64,000 nucleotides of DNA from positions 49,724,001 to 49,788,000 of the forward strand of contig OZ320317.1 in NCBI GenBank assembly GCA_976226885.1. Direction: 5' to 3'. Both the position numbers and the translations under genes were made by a program. The stretch comes from Iphione sp. A-MEVVRFRX5. Lineage: Eukaryota. Shown one piece after another: positions 13,955-25,900 of this stretch (positions are counted from its first letter, which is position 1; every line of letters starts with the position of its first letter). The notes beneath the pieces were generated by a model. The model saw only the letters and a program-made list of their open reading frames with translations, was not told the DNA's origin and ran no database searches.

Positions 13955-14756
13955 TTACGGCCAACTGCAAGTACCAGACTCTTGATAGGGGATCTGGCCA
14001 TTGACCGGCACTGGGCTGGCCACATCTTGGCATGAGGTGTTGAAGCCCTCCTTGCCGAAGTTCTCCGCGTTCTCCTGTTCGGGCGACTTGTGACCAGGAC
14101 CCGTGTGGTGTAGAGGCCTTAGGGAAGGGACAGGTGGTCGGGGAGGGTAGGCCACACCGCCGGCGCCGCCGCCGTTCAGCAGCGGCGAGTGGATGGGCCC
14201 GAAGTCCTCGGAGGGCGGCGGAGGTGGTGGGAGCGGCATGCCATCGGGGTCGAGCTCGAAGTAATGCGGGCCGACACTTCCGTTCTCGCTCGGTGCAGTG
14301 AAATAGGTGTGGTCGTAGCTAGGGATGTGGGCGCTGTCGGGAGGGCCAAGCGGGCTGTGCGGCCCGGCGTGGTGATAGGCACCCTCACCATGAGGCCCAA
14401 ACATGGGTACTCCGCCCGATGGCACGATCATAGCCATCGTAGTGGTGTGCGACGACGATGATGAGGGGCCGGATGTAGTGGTAGGCGCCAACACGGCGTC
14501 GTCGGCTTCATTGACATTGGGAATCGACGGAAGCGGACGTAGTTCCATGTTTAGGTTATAGGCGTACTCGTTCTCTTGCTGTCGCAGATGGCTACCAGGA
14601 GAGAACTTTTTGTCCTTGTACTGGGCGTATTTTTTCTGCTCCATGGTGGAGAAGCCACTAGACCGCATGGTGGAATGACCTTCCTTGTAGTAAAGGTCGG
14701 ACGAAGGGGTTGCTGGATGTAGAGGACGGTCGCACGGTTGCTGCTGGCGACGCCTG
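13955..14756 (-). CDS. Terminal exon: cytoplasmic tail, Tyr- and Pro-rich
   Basis: Acceptor tctcttttcgtgtttttag|C AGG, phase 2, in frame with the 237-aa ORF 13955..14668. GC-rich coding-like composition. The end at TAA 13955 is less certain (see alternative terminal exon finding). Confidence 0.85.
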
Positions 14757-17700
14757 CTAAAAACACGAAAAGAGAAAACGCATCAGGGAAGTATCCGCCA
14801 TGTGGGACAATTCCACTAGCGACGCAGACGATATCTTCACAAACACATTATTTGACAATATGCATGGGGAAATACATGTACCACTGATGTAGCAAACTGT
14901 CGTTGAGTTACAATGCAAATGAAATTCTCGTTTCGTGAAACATGGTCATTTGTAAGTATGAGGCACAGGTACAAGAAAACGCGGTCTCAACAGGGAAATG
15001 CTTTGAGTTACATTTATATATTGTACTCTTCAGTGAACCATAGTACCAACAACACATGAGAATCATGACTAAAAACATTCTTGAGATTCATATTGAAACT
15101 ATTTCCTTGCATACGGGAATACATTAGACATTTATAGTATGATCTTAACTGTATTAAAAACCACCGATTCCGGGTGTTTCATATACACGCGTCATTATAA
15201 GCATGTATTTATGACATTTTACGACTATGATAAGTGTCATTCGTGTTTTCTTAAAACTTATGTTTATGTACAATAAGTTTATATATCAAGGAATCGTAGA
15301 TTTTCATGAAGCTTCCAGAGTAGGTGACGACAAGTATATGTGTTAACTCAGCCTCTGGTTGACGGTATTCTGCCCGATGCATGGTACCGTTTTTGTATAC
15401 TACTTTGATGAGTCCCCAAGTCGTATCCTCTTGACACATAGGTAAGTAGCTTAACCAATTGGACATTTTACTCTGGTATTTGACTCGGGGATGTCACTGA
15501 CTACCGATTCCTGTAACTATTGCTGCAAATCAAATCAGTCTCAGTCTGTTTATGTAAACCACGATGATGAAGATGATGAAAGCGATGACTAAGCATTCAT
15601 CCATTCATCCTCCTGTCATCAGCTATTCTGTGAAAATACTGTTAACATTTCATAGCCGGATATATTTCACAAACAACTACCTATATCAGCTAGCATATTC
15701 AGACATCAATACCATAACGTTACGCACATATCTCATTATGCAGATTGCAATTAAGACGATATAACCGATATGCTTAAATCACTTCCGCTTAATTCATAGC
15801 ATAACTCTTTTAATCAAATACTTTCACGTTTATAATTTAGAACGACATACATCCTCATTTATTGAAAATGACCAGTGCTCCCGGAAGGACACTTCCATAT
15901 CCTCAAGTATTCGAAAACCATATAGTGTATATTTATATATTTTAAGATACGCCTGTGAACTTTTCTTGTACATACCGCTTAATCATGACTAGTCCGACCG
16001 TCAGGATGAGGACACCTATCACCATGGCAATGGCTAATATGATGGTTATCAGGATTCCTGGCAGAAAAGAAAACGTTTGTAATATGTCATGTCTTATCTG
16101 AGCATATCGAAAGAGTTATTGGGATGTCCAGTTGGACGGTGCGAAATTTTTTGAGTCATATAGTGTATAAACAAGTCTGAGTCATAAAAAAACATGGCTT
16201 CAATTGCGATCAACTTAAATACTGATTTTCTACTGTGTTGTCAGTAATATATAGTATATTTCTAAACCGTTGAATGGTAATGGGCAGGAATTGTCAAGAT
16301 TGTTGAAAGTATTAAGAAACACGCACACATCTATAGCTCAACGTTTACAATTATATAACCCCTCTCCATTTATTATTCAACGCGTTATGATACTAACCAA
16401 CAGGTAGTGAAGGCGCGTCTTCCGAACTGGACGGGTACGCCACATCATCAGGCGCTGAAGTGTTTAAGTCAGGAAATTGTACGGATTAACCAGGATATCT
16501 ACTACAATATTTCAACTTCAAGAGAAAAAAACGTGACGTTGCTACAAATCCCCTTTAGGCTATGGGTAAAAGAACACGAGACGGCGCTCAATGATGTGAG
16601 TATCTATGGCGCCAAGAAGCTCAAGTTGCCCCATTCATCTTGCGCTAGGCAGCTAGCTTGAATACAGTGGCGCCATCTGTCGTTTGGATCACGTACAAAA
16701 TGTCATTTTCACTAAATGCAGTGCACGCATCGCTTAAGCGTATGTTATTTGCATGTGAAAGCTCAAGTGCATTTGCCCATATAAGCACATGTGTGTTCTA
16801 ATTGATCCGAATACTCCATTAGCTCGAAATCTTGTACATACACAATATACGCATGCGTGCATGTGTGTGTGGTGTCTGTGAATAAAGCATTTGTAGACCA
16901 GAACGGAAATATTAAGGGATATTGTTTTGTTTTATTCCATAGATTCAACAAAACTACTTTAAATTACACCTGGACTAAACTACTGGTAATCTCATTGAAA
17001 TTTATGAATTCCCGAAGGTTATATTCTATCTACCGTCTCCGAAGTTACCAATTCCTATTAGCAAAATACATAATGCATGTATGTGACTCACGGTGAGGAC
17101 AGGTGCCGACGTCGCCCGTCCACGCACTCTCTCGGCACGTGACCTCCCAAGTCTCGCCGGTAGCTACACAGCCGATGGTGAGTACCTGACCATTGCGCTT
17201 CATCCACGTGTTGATCGGTGGCTCAAACTCCGAACAACCGATCACTAGGAGAACACATGAGGATAAGTTAAGTTCAGACCCAGTCTTTACATATTCGCCG
17301 TCTTAGGCTATATTATGTGCTTTGGAGAGTATGTTTGGTATGTCAAAAAAGCAATAATTTGTATACTGAATGCAATGGAAGTTATAAAGGTTTTCGACAC
17401 ACACTGGGAAAGATGAACGGATAGAAAGGAATACCAGTACGTGTGTTATGAGCATATTATGAGCTGTATCTCCATAACTACATGTTATTGTATCCACTAA
17501 ATCTCCCTATAAGCTGAGAGACTTTGGGCTACAATCTGAATAAAAGTTTTTTTCTGCATTTGTATCAAAGAAAGTGCTCTAGCCGAAAAAAAAGTTTGAT
17601 TTTGTTGCTATTATAATCATACACGGATAAGCTTCCAATAAGTGGCTACTGTAAATCGTCCGGGAAGTCATTAGTTATCTTCGTGTATCGAACTAAATTG

Positions 17701-20127
17701 AGTTCGATATTATCTTTCTGGTTATACATACTTTCGTACATCAGCAGAAAGTAGCCGAAGTTGCCGCCCCTCTTGCCCTCGGCCACCTCAATCTGCACTT
17801 CGTTCGAGTCGGACACGTAGGCCGTGCTGAGTCGATCTCGACTCCCACACACGGCGAACGGCTTGTCTTTGCCTGGTTCCCGCAGGGTGGCGTATGTGTA
17901 GCACACCTCGGGCAGACCCAGGTGGGCCGTGGCGCTGCTACCCGCCGTTCCGCCGCTGAGGCCGCCGCCGGCGCCCGACGGCTGGTTGCGATGGCGGGTG
18001 GAGAGGGCGAAGTCGAGCAAGGTGATGTTGAGGCGTTGACCTGGTCGCGCTCGTAGAACCCACGGGCAGCTCTTGCGGCCACAGCCGGTCTCCTCCGTTA
18101 GTACGCTGGCGATGTAGCCACCCCGGGACTCGGCCTGGATATAGGTGGCATTGCGGCACGTTCGACATGTCGGGGTGTGCACTGAGAAAAAACCGCAAGC
18201 AGTTGGGCATTCATGCTATGAACAATTAGAAAGTTTTGTATAGGACCTGCGTTCGTATATCATGATGACATCGGTGAGACTGTGTAACACGGATGGGATT
18301 AACAGCATTAACTTTTTTTAAAACAAAGAAATTGGAATAATATCAATGTAAAACAGTCCGGGTACATATTGAGGACACACCAGTATTTCACACACCTCCA
18401 CAACATAGTACATGTATATGTTTACACGATTTAGTATTTCAAATTTATACTATCACCAGGAAAATTATCCAGAACTTGCTGAGGCTGTGAATGATTTTGG
18501 TAATAGCATAATCACAAAGCAGAGAAACGGGAATTACCATCATTTTTATGTGGCCAAATTGAACAATGAGTATTTAGAATTGTTTTTTCACATTTATATG
18601 ATATTATACAGCCCAAGGAAAGTGTTTGTGTAATGAAAATGATTGTCTTTACCACCAGCATTGTAGCCTATGGATGGAAAACCATAAAATAGGAACACTA
18701 TCCACTCATTAGTCTAATCAAAACATAGTTTATTTGCTTCCCATTTTCAATAATTGAGACTAAAGGAAGACCTACACTTCGGCCCGGTTTCCATACCTGC
18801 GGTGCTGTCCGTGTGCATTGACATGCGGTGAATTAGGTACTTATTGGTCTATAGGCAATCAGTGAGAGGTGTTCCATACCTGCGGCAATGTCTGTGTGCG
18901 TTGATGTGCGTTGATGTGTGTTGCTTGTTTTCAAACCCTGCCCGATAATTTCCCGCACACGCACACCAACGCACAGGAAACGCACGCAGAGCTCCACCGC
19001 ACCTCGCCGCATACCAACGCATGTAAGGAAACCGGGCCTTCTACTTCGTGCACTTTTACTTCTAGCCATGTTCTCATTTAGCGATTATGCCAAACTGCGC
19101 CACCTACCGGCGTCATTCTCGCATGACAAGATTAGTGCAATCAGTGTCACGAATACAACTCTTTATTTTCTCTGACCTTGATTCTTTTTCTCAGCCGAAC
19201 GGAATCTCATTATACAAGAATAGTAATATTTCCCGACGGTAACTGCGATAAAGCACTATGTCAAGCACGATGGTGATAGATCTACCTAATTCGCTTATAT
19301 AATATGGATATTTACACTACACATATAAAACGTTGCCTGAAAGTAGCACGGCCATGGGGAGGACTTCTCAGGGGTGTGAGATAGTTTTCAAGTGATATAA
19401 TTTCCATCCTTCCAAATGTTAATGTGAATACTTTTCAGATCTACTCATAACTGCATATATATTCAAAAGAGAACAAAAGAGAATACAAAGGAAAACATAC
19501 AAAAAACATGGCCCTACTTTTTAAAGAGCTGAATAGGAATATCTAATGCCTGCACTGAGGGTTGTCAGCCACTCTATACTTTGACCCCTCCCTCTGACTG
19601 GGGGAGGGGAGGGGTGGTGGTTTGGGGAGGAGTAGGATAGTCTGTGTGTGCATATGTGTGTGTGTGTGCCAAAGGCCTGAGGTCAGTCATGCAGAACCGA
19701 GGTTGTAAACCATCAGGGGTTGCAATCGCCAAAGGCGCTTGTTAAATCAAGAAAAAATCAATTCATGTAAACCTCTAAGATGGAACGTTTAATATTCATG
19801 TGAGTGGTTTTATCAGCAAAAATGTAGGAGGACATATGTTACCTGGAATGCATCCGTAGGAGGCCTTCAGATAGGTCTTAAAATCCTTGGGGCAGGGGTT
19901 GGCTCTGTCCAGCGTACTGTCGGGGATGCGTATCTCACACTTCCGGCGCCCAGAACAGCGGCTATCAAGATGCGGCAGCACGTCGGCCTCGCAGCCCACA
20001 TAACCGTAGTCACGTATGACGCAGCGGCCCAGCTCCATGCGGCCATACCTGGCCCTGTCCATGACGACCACCTCGTTGATGGAACAAGAGGCTCGGAATG
20101 TCTCCGCTTCGCAATATTCCTTGTCCC
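13955..20127 (-). CDS. Multi-exon gene (5'-incomplete): type I membrane receptor with SUEL-type lectin + CUB-like + sushi/CCP-like domains, TM helix and long Tyr/Pro-rich cytoplasmic tail. join(complement(19843..20127,17732..18181,17092..17244,16398..16454,15976..16057,13955..14756))
   Basis: All six exons have GT-AG boundaries, and the phases match (1-1,1-1,1-1,1-1,1-2,2-stop). Total 1829 nt = 2 nt + 609 codons including the stop, with no internal stop. Domain order is coherent for a cell-surface receptor. Domain names come from motif recognition, not from a database search. Confidence 0.88.
15976..16057 (-). CDS. Exon: transmembrane helix (GILITIILAIAMVIGVLILTVGLVMIKR)
   Basis: Acceptor ttttcttttctgccag|GA, donor AAG CG|gtatgt, 82 nt. 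About 25 uncharged hydrophobic residues followed by a basic stop-transfer KRRRR after splicing. Confidence 0.87.
16398..16454 (-). CDS. Exon: juxtamembrane stalk (PPDDVAYPSSSEDAPSLPVG)
   Basis: Acceptor acacttcag|CG, donor GTT G|gttagt, 57 nt, phase 1-1. Joins the sushi and TM exons in frame. Too short to appear in the ORF track. Confidence 0.75.
17092..17244 (-). CDS. Exon: sushi/CCP-like 4-Cys module
   Basis: Acceptor gtgttctcctag|TG ATC, donor CAC C|gtgagt, 153 nt. GCSEFEPP...TIGC...WEVTCRESAWTGDVGTCPH has four Cys and a Trp before the last Cys. Confidence 0.85.
17732..18181 (-). CDS. Exon: divergent CUB-like domain
   Basis: Acceptor ttttttctcag|TG CAC, donor GAA A|gtatgt, 450 nt. Contains GYIASVLTEETGCGRKSCPWVLRARPGQRLNITLLDF (CUB C-x-W-x-I-x-A-x-x-G-x-R-I-x-L/I pattern), VCGSRDR and a terminal FLLMYE strand. 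N-glycosylation sequons NAT and NIT. Confidence 0.9.
18781..19038. mobile_element. PIF/Harbinger-type MITE (258 bp) in the lectin-CUB intron
   Basis: TIRs GGCCCGGTTTCC...GGAAACCGGGCC and an identical 3-bp TSD (TTC) on both sides. Confidence 0.85.
19843..20127 (-). CDS. Exon: SUEL/galactose-rhamnose-binding lectin-like domain
   Basis: Acceptor ttttctttaaag|GG GAC, donor CCA G|gtaaca, 285 nt. Translation (G)DKEYCEAETFRASC...RARYGRMELGRC...GC...SRCSGRRKC...NPCPKDFKTYLKASYGCIP has the 8-Cys SUEL pattern with YGR and DPC/KYL-like motifs. Confidence 0.92.
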
Positions 20128-22697
20128 CTTTAAAGAAAAAAAAAACAATTTGGATTTTCTTAATTGAACGGTTAGTATGCATGAGTTGTGTATAACAACT
20201 CAAAGGAATTGACGTCTCAAACGTGTTTTTTTCATATACATGTAGGTATGCTTAGCGAATGCCAAGGTTCCTGAGTTGTAGTCCCTCTATTTCTAAATTT
20301 CTAAAAGTTTCTAAAAAACAGTATCTTCCATTTCATCTCATGTTAAATGCTTAATTAATACAGTTCTGGTTGCAGTTTTCAAATAAGGAATTCGCAAAAA
20401 AATGGAAAGTAACAATAGCATGAATTTTAATTATCTCTGAGATGTGAATCCTTCCAATAAAACAAGTTGTAAGGACAACCAAGCTGAGACTTTTGCAGTT
20501 ATCCAGGAGTTTTTTGTTATTCCCTTTAAAATAATTTTAAGGTGTGGTGCAATTGACTCTACCGTGATTTATCTTTGTTTATTCTATAAACATGAAATAT
20601 GGACGTAATTTCACAATTTCTCCTCATTACACCCCTCCCGTCTCTATAATTGCGAGTTCACACTACTGTTACGCGTAGAGAAAAGAATGACACAAGAAGT
20701 AGAAAAAAGTTTCTGCCTGATGAAGATCGCAATTTGCCTACACTACTCTCACCCTCTTGGCCGACAGAGCCCCGCTTCTTGTGCTCTTCGCCTAATGATA
20801 CGAACAGAGGTGCAGCCGACAATCCCACGTCACACAAAAACCTACTCAGCCAGTAACGAGCTACTCGCCTCTGTGTCTCAGCCGACCTCGAGCAGCCCAA
20901 GCCACAGGATGCGGCTCCGCAAGGCGCTCTGCTTGCTTGGAAACCCCCGAGTTCCTCCCCTCCAGCTACACCCAAAACGGCGCCTCTGTGGCGCCGCCTG
21001 TCTGATCAAAGCGACACCTCATGTTGACTGTGGAAACCGACACTGTGACGGCCCCTAGCGGATGATAGCGGCGGCAATTATTTCAAGCTTCGGATGTAAA
21101 GAACACGAACTCAGGTGGATGGCAGCATCGGCCCCTTTTAGAATGCATATGGACTAGGATCCTGCTTGATTCCGCATATATGTAACCATTTCTATAGTAA
21201 ATGTTTACACTCTGATTCAAGGGGAAATTCAAATAATCCATTTTCATGAAAGAACTGGCCACGACTGTTATATCGCCACTTTCGTTTCCTTTAACGAAGA
21301 AAAACTTACTTAAGACATCTACCGTAGGAAAATACCTATTATTCACTGCCTGTCACATGTGAGAACCCCTAACCGCAGTCGGTAGGGCACAAAAGACGGA
21401 ACCTTCTACCCATTGCCTTGCTTCCTTTTGAAGTCAATCTGGTCGGATAAGCAAGCATCTCTGGCACTCCTTCATGTACTGCTTCCAACAACACCTCAAC
21501 CCAGCTGACCGAGTTAATGCTCTGCATTGACACTAAGCTGCTCGCCAGCACCAATGCCAGGGGGGTGCGCTAGGTCGGCGCCGACCCAGGAGTCGCTCGC
21601 GACGAGATCAAACAAGCCGCCCCGGCCTTTGTTATCGATCTGGCGGGTGGGCCGATAGCCGGACAACCGAACGGCCAGCTTTCCGGTTAACTGTGAAAGG
21701 GGGGGGGGGGTTGGTAAGGCAGAGTTTCGGCCGAGCGTGTCAGGGCGGCCCACATCCTGGCTACTGGTCAGACTGTGTTTGCTAGCATTGACACCCACTG
21801 CCGAGGTGTCTGCACCGACCCGCTAGCAGTGGCGCCTCACGTACGTGCTAGACATACATAAGAAAGCAGCCCTTCGCTGAAGTCGGACAACCCGGCGTCG
21901 GCCGCCATCGAAGAAAAGCAGGAGAAATGCGATGCAAGTAGGATTACCGGGAATCATTGCCGACTATTTTACTGGACACGAGGGAACAGAAATAAATATT
22001 GTATTGGTGGCGATGTGATCAACAAGAAAGATCCTATATTTGTGCGGACTACACTCACCGTTTAAATTTGTCAACAATAAAAAACTGAAAACACTAAGTA
22101 CATGAAAAAGGTAACAAATACTAGTTCGATTTTTTTAAACAACATATGTCATGAAACACGTAAAGAGATAAAGTAGACTGTTGAACGTATTGATTTTCTC
22201 CTTTTTTTGCAGCCTATTGTTCTGGTCATCTCCGGCCACAGCGTTCCCCTCATACATATATACATGTACATGTACGTGCCTTATAATGTCCAACAGAAAC
22301 GAAAACACAATAATCAAGAGTGAAGGGAGGCCGTCTAATTTTCGCTGACGAATATCCTCGAGAATTGCTGTAGCCCTTTTTATACATACGGAGCGAATGT
22401 TCTTCTACGTGTTACGTTGGGCTTAACGCGACGATTTATTGGGTGCATCCAGCCAGGCGTTGCTAACAAGAAGTTTGTACCATGTTCATCGTCGTCGCAA
22501 CTAATTCTAGTTCAGCCTCATTATGTTTGTGTCCGCTCAGCAATAATAACCTAAGGGGTTGACCAACTAAATATGCCACATTTGTTTCACTCTACTTAGA
22601 GCTCTGGAACATTGCACCCTCGTCGAAGTGATAGAAGCGACGCCAACCCGTTTACTTATGCAGCGCCGGCAGACTTTGAGGCAGACGGGCGCCATAC

Positions 22698-22938
22698 TGG
22701 ATCCGGCTTGACTTCCGCTTCCGGCATGATATCGGCCGGGCGGCCGGGCGGCTGAGACGAGGGGCAATGTTTGCCGACAACAAAATGTCAGTTGATACGA
22801 CAAGGCGATGACGGTGGTCCGCGGCCCGGGAGACATTGGCCTAAGGGAAGTGGGGGACGTTCTGAAATCGACAGCACTGGCTACAGTGTCTCGGGTGATG
22901 CATGATGTGGCTAAGGCAAGGACTAAAGACAGCACCAT
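22698..22938 (-). CDS. Candidate first coding (signal peptide) exon of the receptor gene
   Basis: gccATGg Kozak context, then MVLSLVLALATSCITRDTVASA. Two phase-1 donors are compatible with the lectin exon: TCC A|gtatgg (exon end 22698) and ATA A|gtaaac (22656). Both donors are only moderate. Confidence 0.33.
22711..22724 (-). promoter_or_regulatory. Tandem ETS/GABP-like motif CCGGAAGCGGAAGT
   Basis: Direct consensus match inside the GC-rich candidate first-exon region. Confidence 0.3.
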
Positions 22939-25900
22939 GGCTTCTGAAGTTAATACGGCCCTACAAATATATTATGTGAATCCGGACGGATAAACAATTC
23001 CTGACCCCACACCATCTAATTACCGATATTATACAAGGGGTCCTATGCATCGATGGAGACTTGTCCTTGAAGCACTCTTGCTTCGGTTTTCGCATCTTCT
23101 AATCGTGTTTTGCCTGGGCAGGAGCTGGCACCGAGACACGACACGGCAGTGCGTGTAATTACAGGAGATAATAACGCTATCAACCAGCCCCATACGGTAC
23201 TGCCTATCTACTACCTATTTCGCAGAGTCCGATATACCTCTAGCTTCATGAGAGTTCCAGCGGTGCCAATTTCTAGGCCCCGACTAGTTGCCTGAGTCCC
23301 TATCATGTATGGAATTAACAAAAGTGGAGCATCGCAATAGATGACGTGTCCTTGAGGTAACAGGACATGGATGGACTTTCCCACATTATTAACTTATTGA
23401 TCAGCATGTGGGGATCCATATACCTGATATTTTTAACGAGCACGTGCTTATCGATCCGACAGCTATTGACCGAGGGACAAAGCCATTCTCTTAGGTGCTT
23501 ATATGCACGACGTATAATGAGATATGGGCAAAGCACCAATGCATAATCTGCTTACAGCTGATGCTATTCCATTACTATGTCTCCCAACTGATAACTATCT
23601 CCATTATACGCATAGACAATATTGTTCAGTAGAGGAGTGTCGGGAATATCATAATAGTTGCCATGTGTAGATATAAATGTAAACTGAAAGTAAACATGAA
23701 AATGTAAATTATCAATGTCAAAATCTAGGCTCAGACTTCAGAACATATATAAGCCATGGCAACAATATATATACTGTCTAGAGAACACCATGTTTTATAT
23801 TACTTGATAGGGGCCGCCCATATGACAGGATGGTTCATGAAGGAACTGGGTTCCGATTTCATGACTATCAATCTCTCCTCAGAGAACTGCAAATAATTAT
23901 GGCTGCGATGGACTGTCCAAAAGGAGTCGATCTACGGCGGTGTTTTCAGCTAAAGGCGATAAGACACGCTCTCCTTTCAGTCCCTAGCCCGATCTACAAG
24001 TTACCGTTGCCCACCCCCTTTAGCCACTAGCACCCGATCCTGATAGCACCCCTGCACCCCCCCCCCTCCAACCAGCCACCCCCGCTGCCTCTATTTACCG
24101 CGGTCACGTCCCTGCGCGACCCAACCGCCCCTACTCGCACTCTCTGTCAATTTCGGCGCGACAGCCAGCCGATATCTGAAGCCAGCGAGAGCAAAGAAAA
24201 ATCAACTTCTTTGATTTCCCTTGGTCCGGAGTCGTGTCACACGGGGGCTGCACTGGGATGCATCCTCCCCCCCCCCTCCCCCTGTCTCTCAACCCGAACC
24301 GCTTTATTTTTCTAAGGACTAGACGTCATGGCTGTGGTGCTGCCTGCACCACCACAGACCCTGCTTTCGGGTCGCGCTAGCCATAGTCACCTAGTTGTAA
24401 TCACACGGTTTCTGTGGCGCCTGACACGGGGAGAAAAGCTCCAGTCGCCTGCCGCCGGCGTGCCCGACGCTGCTAAACGTGAGCCTTTGAAGTCACGCCG
24501 GCGCGACCGGCCACAGATGGCCGGTGGTTGGGATGAGCTGTATGAAGAGACTGGTGCCGATGAAAGCCACTGCTTGAAGCCATTCATTTTTTACCGCTAG
24601 AGGCACAGTGGACGGACTACCAAGACGGGGGACAAGAGTGGGGTATGGTAGTGGTTGCAGCCCATTGATGTGACCATTTTAACTCGCCTGCCCATTGTGA
24701 CTGAGTCTTGTCAGCCCCCACCCAGTTGGTGGTGAGATGGGGGCCTTCATTCTATACGATCATGGAGGCCAGCTTTGCCAGTCTCACAAAGGTGATCACC
24801 GCCGACAGCTATCCTGCACTAGACGTCCGGACGACAAACATCTCATGGATCTGTCGTCTAAATCACGCGTGCCGACGATGGACGCTCGGTGGAGATCTCC
24901 GGTTGGCGTACACATTAGCCTTTGACCTTTTGCAACGAGGGCGATGGAGGCGGTGAAGGCGACCGGAAGGCGCGCATCGATAAGTTGTCATTTGGCCGTG
25001 CGGCGGACGCCGACACTGGCATCGCCCCGGCTCATTTGGCACGCGGACAATGGCGCTGAAAGGTCGTCGGACATGGGCGGCACAATAGCCACCAATGTCA
25101 GGTCGACGGCCCAGCCGCTACGGCTAGGTCTTGGCTTTTGAATACAGTCGCAAGGCCCGCATTGACAGAGTACCTAACCACGCCCATTTGTGGTCTGTAA
25201 CCTTCCTGGCTATTCACCTCCACAGCACTACTTGACGTGCGCTAACCCGGCGCTAGATCTTCGGGCAATAAACCTCACTGAGTGCACCGTCGATTTCATT
25301 CATATTGACATTGTGGCCTTTAGTATAAAATAACTGGGGCTTCAAGATTGACTCGACATAGCAGACTGGAAAAGGCGACACACAAAAAGTATGTGGAGCT
25401 GGCTGCACTCTGGGCTGAAACATGTGGGCCTTCGCGATTATCATACGCAGATAAATGTTTCACATCCCTGATGATATCAGTGGTCGATGTTATCGAGTTC
25501 AGTATATATCATTCAACACACCATATGCGGCCATCACAACGACTGGCAGTCAAATACAGGGGGGATAATGGACACTGGGCGCCTTAATAAATGGTAGAGA
25601 GGTCATTCAAGGGGCCTGGGGAGAGAGATGGCTGGTTAAGGTGAGTGACTTCTGGCAGAAAGTTCGCATAACGGATGCATGGGCACTTATACTGTCCGGA
25701 GGGATGGGCAGAGGAGGTAGCCTGTGTGAGAAAGACAATGCCACTGCATGCGAGGCCAACTGCCGATACAATCGCTGTGGCCATAACAAAGTCCGAGCCG
25801 TATCATATTTCCCGCCTGCTATCTGCTATCCGGTCTACATATGTCAACCAGCCTTCTCGGGTATGGCTAATACCACATCCGACCGCACAGCGGCAACCAG

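What the first reader, a model, noticed from the sequence alone, without database searches (positions are those of the whole stretch)
13955..20127. Lectin-CUB-sushi single-pass receptor with no clear vertebrate or model-organism counterpart
The sequence shows SUEL + CUB-like + CCP-like + TM + a long signalling tail. SUEL domains occur in rhamnose-binding lectins, latrophilins and the Slit co-receptor EVA-1/EVA1C; CUB and CCP occur in complement-type and neuropilin-like proteins (established). I do not recognise this exact combination as a named, characterised gene. I recall similar hypothetical proteins from annelid-type genomes but cannot verify that. It is a candidate glycan-sensing receptor for neural wiring or microbial recognition (inference), and the best candidate for an undescribed system in this window.
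Basis: partly seen in the sequence, partly recalled or inferred. Interest (0 to 1): 0.75.

Follow-up and report, generated by a model that had tools for sequence, protein, structure and literature searches.

The report
Annelid lectin-CUB-sushi membrane receptor gene
This is a real, well-conserved worm gene for a cell-surface receptor with a lectin, a CUB and a sushi domain; its family already has a name in GenBank (lugworm "Gal-binding and CUB domains containing receptors"), but I found no report of what any member does.

Summary
On the minus strand, 13955-20127 carries six phase-compatible AG/GT exons: SUEL lectin, CUB, a four-cysteine sushi module, a 57-nt stalk mini-exon at 16454-16398 (found here by cross-species conservation), a transmembrane helix, and a 265-residue tail. 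The signal-peptide exon lies further upstream and is not resolved.

An orthologous locus from another species aligns only at these exons. dN/dS is 0.07-0.16, and the membrane helix is 26/26 identical. Transcript-length contigs from other species encode the same domain order without interruption.

The gene is not without relatives. Its CUB exon finds 312 protein clusters at E<=1e-10. Every named relative seen is annelid: five Capitella teleta hypothetical proteins and Arenicola marina "Gal-binding and CUB domains containing receptor 15". So this is a new member of a catalogued family of unknown function. No counterpart outside annelids was seen, but that was not tested exhaustively.

The tail keeps invariant short motifs across species (ENEYAY, RPLPSIP, HYFELDP, C-terminal SWP), which suggests adaptor-based signalling. 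Sugar binding is uncertain, because the sugar-binding loop is altered.

No RNA run was listed. First-reader notes of this scan report at least seven similar loci elsewhere in this genome; I did not check them.

The parts
19843..20127 (-). SUEL / rhamnose-binding-lectin exon (285 nt, phase 1-1, 8 Cys)
   Evidence: Pfam PF02140 scores 35.1 bits, above the 31.4 cut-off. PDB sequence hits to SUL-I, CSL3 and latrophilin Lec domains. AG/GT boundaries. 84% aa identity to the ortholog in L002.
17732..18181 (-). CUB exon (450 nt, phase 1-1)
   Evidence: Pfam CUB scores 14.8 bits, below its cut-off. Family profile versus cubilin CUB gives E=3.8e-5. AF2 pLDDT 83.3. Structural hits are nearly all CUB, Z up to 8.4. 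dN/dS 0.07-0.11 against L002.
17924..17982 (-). G/S/A-rich low-complexity loop inside the CUB exon; variable in length across the family
   Evidence: Low pLDDT (53-63) for residues 60-90 of the model. Not aligned by blastn between window and L002. In L002 and P0003 an intron sits at this point; in the window it is in-frame coding sequence.
17092..17244 (-). Sushi/CCP-like exon (153 nt, phase 1-1; 4 Cys + invariant Trp)
   Evidence: No Pfam hit. 53% identity to P0030 and 37% to A. marina GCR15. In the P0030 ectodomain model, residues 105-292 align to C1s CUB2-CCP1 and MAP-1 CUB2-CCP1. dN/dS 0.16.
16398..16454 (-). Stalk mini-exon (57 nt, phase 1-1) ending ...PSLPV + G
   Evidence: tblastx block conserved and colinear with L006 14183-14221. 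AG and GT boundaries in both species. Its last base G restores the Gly before the TM helix that relatives have (SIPTG-ILI).
15976..16057 (-). Transmembrane exon (82 nt, phase 1-2)
   Evidence: 25 hydrophobic residues then K-R-R-R. 26/26 aa identical to L002 at 79% nt identity. 81% identity to P0030.
13955..14753 (-). Cytoplasmic tail exon with stop codon (13955-13957); tandem NAGNAG acceptor, alternative start 14756
   Evidence: Orthologous tail ORFs P0174-P0177 at 31-66% identity, with invariant blocks. The L002 acceptor aligns with the 14753 start.
14519..14539 (-). RPLPSIP, matching the class I SH3-ligand pattern RxxPxxP; R, P, L, P, S and the last P are invariant in the 7 aligned tails
   Evidence: Alignment A4; coordinates checked. 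The reading as an SH3 ligand is inference from the established consensus.
14558..14575 (-). ENEYAY tyrosine motif (family-wide EN[DE]Y)
   Evidence: N and Y are invariant in A1 and A4; coordinates checked.
14246..14266 (-). HYFELDP tyrosine motif (YxxL; family-wide YFELD)
   Evidence: Y, F, L, D and P are invariant in A4. Present in most full-length family members.
13958..13966 (-). C-terminal SWP, the signature of this orthogroup
   Evidence: Invariant in 7 sequences, including transcript-derived P0030 and P0158.
22878..22938 (-). Tentative signal-peptide exon (ATG, 20 codons + 1 nt, phase-1 GT donor); unconfirmed
   Evidence: Right phase, hydrophobic core, and the same length to the first Cys as in P0158. 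Against it: a weak donor, no conservation in L006, and a position upstream of a conserved promoter-like block.
22686..22730 (.). Conserved non-coding block with CCGGAAGT (ETS-like) repeats; possible promoter element
   Evidence: tblastx and alignment with L006 4295-4339. The motif reading is inference.
21578..21640 (.). Conserved non-coding block upstream of the SUEL exon
   Evidence: blastn 75% over 64 nt with L006 6155-6215, colinear. No conserved reading frame.

Best explanation
The region is an intact gene under purifying selection in an annelid genome. It encodes a type I membrane protein of about 630 residues, with 608 codons in the six exons mapped here plus an unmapped signal-peptide exon.

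It belongs to the annelid family deposited as 'Gal-binding and CUB domains containing receptors' (GCR). Within that family it sits in a distinct orthogroup marked by a C-terminal SWP.

Shown:
- The ectodomain is one SUEL lectin domain, one CUB domain and one CCP/sushi module, followed by a short stalk.
- The membrane helix and short blocks of the tail are nearly invariant between species.

Inferred:
- The SUEL-CUB-CCP unit binds an extracellular ligand. A protein partner is as likely as a sugar, or more so.
- Occupancy is passed on through the conserved tail, which offers a class I SH3 site (RPLPSIP), three conserved tyrosine motifs (ENEYAY, SYDHTYF, HYFELDP), a polyproline run and a fixed C-terminus. 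These would dock SH3/SH2-type adaptors or Src-type kinases.
- The invariant membrane helix suggests pairing with itself or with a partner protein in the membrane.
For: Gene model: six exons with AG/GT boundaries and matching phases.

Conservation:
- Only these exons align with the orthologous locus L002/L006; introns do not align.
- dN/dS is 0.07-0.16, with saturated synonymous sites and a 26/26-identical TM helix.
- Contigs of 1.9-3.7 kb from other species encode the same domain order in one uninterrupted ORF (P0030, P0158).

Domains: SUEL by Pfam and PDB; CUB by profile and fold; CUB-CCP pair by the P0030 ectodomain model, pLDDT 84.7, pTM 0.82.

Family:
- 1433 clusters at E<=1e-3 and 312 at E<=1e-10.
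- Named members are A. marina GCR15 and Capitella hypothetical proteins.
- On a quick CUB-exon tree the window groups with P0001, P0003, P0002, P0030 and P0158 at SH-aLRT 98.

Tail: invariant motif blocks across 7 sequences and family-wide EN[DE]Y, HIYESP and YFELD.
Against: - No expression data: no RNA run was listed for this DNA. The joins rest on homology and conservation, not on reads from this species.
- The signal-peptide exon is not identified.
- No ligand, cell type or partner is known.
- All motif readings (SH3, SH2) come from consensus patterns only. YFEL also fits an endocytic YxxPhi signal.
- The sushi exon has no Pfam hit, and its fold was modelled only in a relative at 53% identity.
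- What the source paper says about the GCR family could not be read.
Confidence: 0.6

Rival explanations
1. It is an endocytic or clearance lectin receptor. The SUEL domain binds rhamnose- or galactose-type glycans on microbes or glycoproteins, and the conserved YFEL(D) acts as a YxxPhi sorting signal that takes the cargo into the cell. Signalling is not its main job.
For: The window copy keeps the Glu after Cys1, the YGR tyrosine and a loop-2 lysine, which the latrophilin RBL study found necessary for sugar binding. YFELD is conserved family-wide. The named relative comes from A. marina; that the record derives from the lugworm coelomocyte immune-transcriptome paper cited is my inference.
Against: Loop 2 has a one-residue insertion and Gly117 is replaced in the window. 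P0158 and many family members have Arg at the lysine position, or Gln instead of Glu; the equivalent changes abolished or cut sugar binding about 80-fold in latrophilin. Strict conservation of an SH3-type site, several other tail blocks and the whole TM helix is more than a sorting signal needs.
Confidence: 0.2
2. It is a co-receptor or auxiliary subunit. Like neuropilin, Neto, EVA-1 or the latrophilin lectin domain, it binds a protein ligand or a neighbouring membrane protein and modulates another receptor or channel, for example in neural wiring.
For: The TM helix is 100% identical between species and 81% identical to a distant relative. CUB single-pass proteins dominate the structural hits (Neto2, neuropilin, Kremen). 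The SUEL model superposes on latrophilin Lec domains that bind teneurin or TOL-1, at Z about 12 and rmsd 2.0-2.2 A. Vakonakis et al. argue that receptor-attached RBL domains often act in protein-protein contacts. One-to-one orthology with slow evolution fits a developmental role better than a fast-evolving immune role.
Against: No partner is known. The long tail with its own conserved docking motifs suggests that the protein signals by itself. The family is large and divergent (median tip length about 1 change per site), a pattern also seen in immune-type receptor expansions.
Confidence: 0.15
3. It is not a working gene: a set of domain-like ORFs that are not spliced together, or a decaying copy.
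For: No RNA evidence for this species. The first exon was not found. Pfam fails on the sushi exon and is below its cut-off on the CUB exon.
Against: All exons are open, in phase and bounded by AG/GT. Conservation with another species is restricted to exactly these exons, with dN/dS 0.07-0.16. Splice positions and phases are shared with L002. Uninterrupted ORFs on short contigs in other species show the same order.
Confidence: 0.03

Closest known systems
Gal-binding and CUB domains containing receptors (GCR) of Arenicola marina (e.g. GCR15, UCK81578.1), and Capitella teleta hypothetical proteins CAPTEDRAFT_222884, 204696, 221826, 208208, 217495
   Same: Among the full-length members, the same order: signal peptide, one SUEL, one CUB, a 4-Cys sushi-like module, stalk, TM, and a tail with EN[DE]Y and YFEL motifs. 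Some Capitella entries are shorter or lack the sushi module. Identity to GCR15 is 54% in SUEL and 37% in sushi, and the CUB exon matches it at E=2.7e-15.
   Different: The window gene lies in another, well-supported orthogroup (with P0001, P0003, P0002, P0030, P0158). Its own tail signature is RPLPSIP, a PHGEG block, KSPEQENAEN and C-terminal SWP. It has SYDHTYF where GCR15-type members have EHIYESPKF. No function is reported for either, as far as I could read.
Latrophilin (ADGRL) lectin domain and C. elegans LAT-1
   Same: The SUEL/RBL fold. The relative's model superposes at Z 12.1-12.6, rmsd 2.0-2.2 A. The domain is attached to a receptor and may bind proteins rather than sugars.
   Different: Latrophilins continue with olfactomedin, hormone-binding and GAIN domains and seven membrane helices. 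This protein has CUB and CCP domains and one helix.
EVA-1 / EVA1C (Slit co-receptor)
   Same: A single-pass membrane protein with SUEL domains in the ectodomain.
   Different: EVA-1 has two SUEL domains and no CUB or CCP. Its tail family (FAM176) is not detected here.
C1r / C1s / MASP and MAP-1 CUB2-CCP1 module
   Same: A CUB immediately followed by a CCP. The relative's model (residues 105-292) aligns to C1s CUB2-CCP1 and MAP-1 CUB2-CCP1 with 146-149 residues aligned.
   Different: No EGF domain, no protease domain, membrane-anchored. In the profile alignment to cubilin, a Glu of cubilin's CUB that I take (from general knowledge of Ca-binding CUB domains) to be a calcium ligand aligns with a non-acidic position of this family. 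This was read by eye and is not conclusive.
Secreted rhamnose-binding lectins (SUEL, CSL3, SUL-I)
   Same: The 8-Cys domain with the YGR motif and the ...PC...YL... loop. Sequence hits at E 8e-7 to 3e-5.
   Different: Those are soluble tandem-repeat lectins with the GTYKYL loop. Here there is one domain on a receptor, with KDFKTYL in that loop.
CUB single-pass receptors and auxiliary proteins (neuropilin, Neto, Kremen, DCBLD2, SEZ6)
   Same: A CUB-containing type I membrane protein with a signalling or scaffolding tail. CUB fold matches at Z 7-8.
   Different: None of them combines SUEL with CUB and CCP. No sequence similarity outside the CUB fold.

Membership tests
GCR (Gal-binding and CUB domains containing receptors, annelids) | Single N-terminal SUEL / Gal-lectin domain | tested here: met
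   Pfam PF02140 at 35.1 bits, above the 31.4 cut-off; PDB hits.
GCR (Gal-binding and CUB domains containing receptors, annelids) | CUB domain following the lectin | tested here: met
   Below the Pfam cut-off alone. Family profile hits cubilin CUB at E=3.8e-5. The AF2 model matches CUB folds at Z up to 8.4.
GCR (Gal-binding and CUB domains containing receptors, annelids) | Single-pass membrane anchor with a cytoplasmic tail | tested here: met
   25-residue hydrophobic exon followed by KRRR and a 265-residue tail.
GCR (Gal-binding and CUB domains containing receptors, annelids) | Sequence homology to a named member along the ectodomain | tested here: met
   Versus GCR15 (P0071): SUEL 54%, E=1.5e-31; sushi E=1.5e-9; CUB E=2.7e-15.
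GCR (Gal-binding and CUB domains containing receptors, annelids) | Expression in coelomocytes or an immune role (implied by the likely source study) | not testable with these tools
   No RNA run was listed. The source paper is not held.
Sushi / CCP domain (PF00084) | Four Cys in 1-3, 2-4 spacing, an invariant Trp, and the beta-sandwich fold | tested here: inconclusive
   The Cys/Trp pattern is present and invariant in the family. No Pfam hit. The fold is supported only through the relative's model aligned to C1s and MAP-1 CCP1.
Sugar-binding RBL / SUEL lectins | Glu at Cys1+1, Tyr of YGR, Gly and Lys of the GTYKYL loop (Vakonakis 2008) | tested here: inconclusive
   Glu, Tyr and a Lys align. 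Gly is replaced by Lys and one residue is inserted in the loop. Relatives vary K/R and E/Q.
EVA-1 / EVA1C | Two tandem SUEL domains and a FAM176-type tail | tested here: not met
   One SUEL exon only. No Pfam family in the tail.
Latrophilin / adhesion GPCR L | GAIN domain and seven membrane helices after the lectin domain | tested here: not met
   The gene ends after one membrane helix and a tail. Full-length relatives are 496-720 aa with one helix.
C1r/C1s/MASP proteases | CUB-EGF-CUB-CCP-CCP-serine protease | tested here: not met
   Only a CUB-CCP pair is shared. No EGF or protease domain in the window gene or its relatives.

The most novel reading that the evidence does not exclude
The SWP-tail orthogroup is a slowly evolving receptor, seen so far only in annelids. 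Its SUEL-CUB-CCP head binds a protein ligand, as latrophilin binds teneurin, and it couples through a fixed SH3 site and three tyrosine motifs to Src/adaptor-type signalling. That would be an undescribed lineage-specific cell-communication pathway, with the wider GCR family as its diversified offshoots.
Probability: 0.3. Interest if true: 0.6.

Novelty: new member of a known kind. Interest (0 to 1): 0.38.

Why it matters
Annelids carry a large, divergent family of lectin-CUB-sushi receptors, and I found no reported function for it. Here 312 clusters at 50% identity match the CUB exon at E<=1e-10.

This locus gives a clean, cross-species-validated gene model for one slowly evolving member. It also gives a short list of invariant tail motifs and an invariant membrane helix, which turn 'unknown receptor' into testable hypotheses about partners. 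It further shows that first-stage 'no counterpart' calls in this genome can hit families that are already named in GenBank.

It does not open a long-standing question, and the domain kit itself is conventional.

Tried and rejected
- RNA evidence: one search for sequencing runs listed none, so no reads could be laid.
- A 63-nt mini-exon at 16330-16268, which looked like the relatives' stalk (LPF.G), was rejected. It has poor splice signals and no conservation. The conserved stalk exon is at 16454-16398.
- Signal-peptide exon: candidates at 22938, 21957, 22145, 25784 and the in-frame MHTNRS... upstream of the SUEL exon were examined. None is conserved in L006. In L002 the upstream frame has a stop and no ATG, so an upstream exon is required.
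- Weak tblastn matches at 43.5 kb and 45.6 kb (E about 1, wrong order for one gene) were taken as chance.
- Ten other long ORFs in the window have no Pfam family.
- The mir-466 match at 18893-18988 is far below its cut-off and sits on a TG-rich repeat.
- Word-index homolog searches with GCR15 and with an 11-sequence alignment returned few proteins. They say little about range.
- The phrase 'Gal-binding and CUB' occurs in no held paper.
- The likely source, Stanovova, Gazizova and Gorbushin 2022 (doi 10.1002/jez.b.23135, cited), is not held.
- The joined spliced protein was not searched or folded, by instruction.
Full report
**What is in the sequence**

The window is eukaryotic, with no gaps and GC of about 45%.

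Reading the frames against splice signals gives six exons, all bounded by AG and GT and all in compatible phase:
- SUEL, 20127-19843, phase 1-1.
- CUB, 18181-17732, phase 1-1.
- Sushi-like, 17244-17092, phase 1-1.
- Stalk, 16454-16398, phase 1-1.
- Transmembrane, 16057-15976, phase 1-2.
- Tail, 14753-13958, with the stop codon at 13957-13955.

The tail acceptor is a tandem NAGNAG (14756 or 14753). The orthologous locus aligns with 14753. The six exons total 1823 nt, that is 608 codons once one base comes from an upstream exon.

**Domain checks**

- SUEL: the exon passes Pfam's own threshold (35.1 against 31.4 bits). It matches solved rhamnose-binding lectins and latrophilin lectin domains.
- CUB: the exon alone is below threshold (14.8 against 21.4 bits). 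A profile of 90 relatives hits cubilin, PCPE-1, TSG-6 and Neto2 CUB domains, best E=3.8e-5. The AlphaFold model of the window's own exon has pLDDT 83.3, with one low-confidence loop at residues 60-90. That model finds almost only CUB domains, with Foldseek probability about 1 and VIA Z 7-8.4 over about 100 residues.
- Sushi: the exon has no Pfam hit, but it has four Cys and a Trp that are invariant across the family.
- Whole ectodomain: a model of the full-length relative P0030 has pLDDT 84.7 and pTM 0.82. Its first domain superposes on latrophilin Lec at Z 12.6 and rmsd 2.0 A, and its second on CUB at Z 8.8. The second plus third domains align with C1s CUB2-CCP1 and MAP-1 CUB2-CCP1.
- Membrane helix: the TM exon encodes 25 hydrophobic residues followed by K-R-R-R, which gives a type I orientation.

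**Evidence that it is a real, constrained gene**

No RNA run was listed for this DNA, so I used comparison between species.

The tail exon finds orthologous ORFs in four other sources, at 31-66% identity. One of them lies on a 1.28-Mb ENA contig. I fetched that locus as L002, and L006 appears to be its second haplotype.

blastn and tblastx between the window and these loci align only the predicted exons, at 67-79% nucleotide identity. Introns do not align.

The same comparison revealed the 57-nt stalk exon. It ends ...PSLPV plus a G in both species, and it restores the Gly that relatives have before the membrane helix. A different candidate mini-exon at 16330-16268 was not conserved and was dropped.

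dN/dS against L002 is 0.07-0.16 for the CUB and sushi exons, with synonymous sites saturated. The membrane helix is 26/26 identical at 79% nucleotide identity. Splice positions and phases match in L002.

L002 and P0003 have an extra intron inside the CUB exon, just after ...RHRNQ. The window instead has an in-frame G/S/A-rich loop there.

Contigs of 1.9 kb and 3.7 kb from other species carry uninterrupted ORFs (P0030, 522 aa; P0158, 631 aa) with the same order of parts. In those species the exons are therefore joined in RNA.

**The 5' end is open**

In L002 the frame upstream of the SUEL exon has a stop and no ATG, so a separate signal-peptide exon is needed.

The best candidate in the window is ATG 22938 to a phase-1 GT at 22878. 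It has the right length and a hydrophobic core. However, its donor is weak, it is not conserved, and it lies upstream of a conserved promoter-like block at 22730-22686 with CCGGAAGT repeats. I leave it as tentative.

**What family it is**

HMMER with the CUB exon against 1.84 billion representatives gives 1433 hits at E<=1e-3 and 312 at E<=1e-10. Most are exon-sized fragments. All eight hits of 496-651 aa that I scanned have an N-terminal SUEL match, and one of them passes Pfam's CUB cut-off.

One hit is NCBI UCK81578.1, 'Gal-binding and CUB domains containing receptor 15 [Arenicola marina]'. Others are Capitella teleta hypothetical proteins. All named relatives are annelid. Other follow-up reports of this scan also take this genome for an annelid.

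The family therefore has a name. The number 15 implies a series. The likely source is the lugworm coelomocyte transcriptome paper cited. That link is my inference, and the paper is not held. I found no held paper that mentions the family.

A quick tree of CUB exons places the window with P0001, P0003, P0002, P0030 and P0158 at SH-aLRT 98, apart from GCR15 and the Capitella sequences. The careful tree search did not finish, so deeper branches should not be trusted.

**The tail**

Seven tails of this orthogroup share invariant blocks separated by variable linkers:
- ENEYAYN.NMELRPLPSIP
- a PHGEG block
- IPSYDHTYFTAPS
- GPHYFELDPDG.PLPP
- TGPGHKSPEQENAEN
- N.SCQD
- a C-terminal ...CSWP

Across the whole family EN[DE]Y, (E)HIYESP and YFELD recur.

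RPLPSIP fits the class I SH3 pattern RxxPxxP. The tyrosine motifs could serve SH2 docking. YFEL also fits an endocytic YxxPhi signal. These readings come from established consensus patterns and are not shown here.

**Sugar or protein ligand?**

In mouse latrophilin-1 RBL, rhamnose is held by Glu42 (the residue after the first Cys), Tyr63, Gly117 and Lys120. E42D and E42Q weaken rhamnose binding about 80-fold, and K120R abolishes it (PMC2430599).

By HMMER alignment the window has the Glu, the Tyr and a Lys. However, Gly117 is Lys, and the loop carries one extra residue: KDFKTYL in place of GTYKYL. The L002 ortholog keeps the Gly. P0158 has Arg at the Lys position, and several family members have Gln for the Glu.

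Sugar binding is thus possible in this copy but is not a conserved property. The authors of that study proposed protein-protein contacts for receptor-attached RBL domains.

**Mechanism and rivals**

I favour a ligand-binding receptor that signals through adaptor docking on its tail (0.6 for the whole statement; identity of the gene and family is much more certain than the mechanism). The rivals are:
- an endocytic lectin receptor (0.2);
- a co-receptor or auxiliary subunit, suggested by the invariant membrane helix (0.15);
- a non-functional locus (0.03).

**Novelty and score**

This is a new member of a catalogued but functionally unstudied family. The domain kit is conventional, and the combination is already on record for annelids.

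What is new here is the validated gene model with the stalk exon, the definition of an SWP-tail orthogroup, and its invariant motifs. Interest is 0.38.

First-reader notes of this scan list at least seven further SUEL-CUB-(sushi or mucin)-TM loci on other pieces of this genome. I did not test them.

Whole-ectodomain statements rest on the natural relative P0030.

Noticed in passing
window 17924-17982 (minus); L002 3631-4088: Intron presence varies between species inside the CUB exon. L002 and P0003 have a GT...AG intron right after ...RHRNQ. The window and P0001 read straight through, and the window has a 19-residue G/S/A-rich loop there against 4-7 residues in relatives.
   Followed up: partly
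window 22686-22730: Block conserved with L006 4295-4339. It contains repeated CCGGAAGT-type (ETS-like) motifs, and is possibly the core promoter of this gene or of a neighbour.
   Followed up: partly
window 21578-21640: A 64-nt block at 75% identity to L006 6155-6215, with no conserved reading frame. It contains AACAAAG and TTTGAT motifs (SOX/TCF-like), so it is a possible enhancer or untranslated exon.
   Followed up: partly
window 24193-24220 and 25023-25079: Two further short blocks colinear with L006 (96.6% over 29 nt and 79.7% over 59 nt). The first holds a small palindrome, AAATCAAAGAAGTTGATTT, with a TCF-like ATCAAAG. No Rfam family matched.
   Followed up: partly
window 12742-12834 and 12202-12229: Blocks downstream of the stop codon, conserved with L006 19292-19380 and 20158-20185. 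They could be 3' UTR elements or part of a neighbouring gene.
   Followed up: no
window 14753-14758: Tandem NAGNAG acceptor (TAG CAG) at the tail exon. Using the upstream AG would add one Arg to the juxtamembrane KRRR.
   Followed up: partly
L002 and L006 (ENA ERZ25767047, contigs ctg38551 and ctg38419): The same gene, with identical SUEL and tail ORFs, sits on two megabase contigs of one assembly. These are probably the two haplotypes. Intron lengths differ between them.
   Followed up: no
window 18893-18988: A TG/CA-rich stretch with a 10-nt tandem repeat gives a sub-threshold mir-466 match (37.6 against 85 bits). Taken as a composition artefact.
   Followed up: yes
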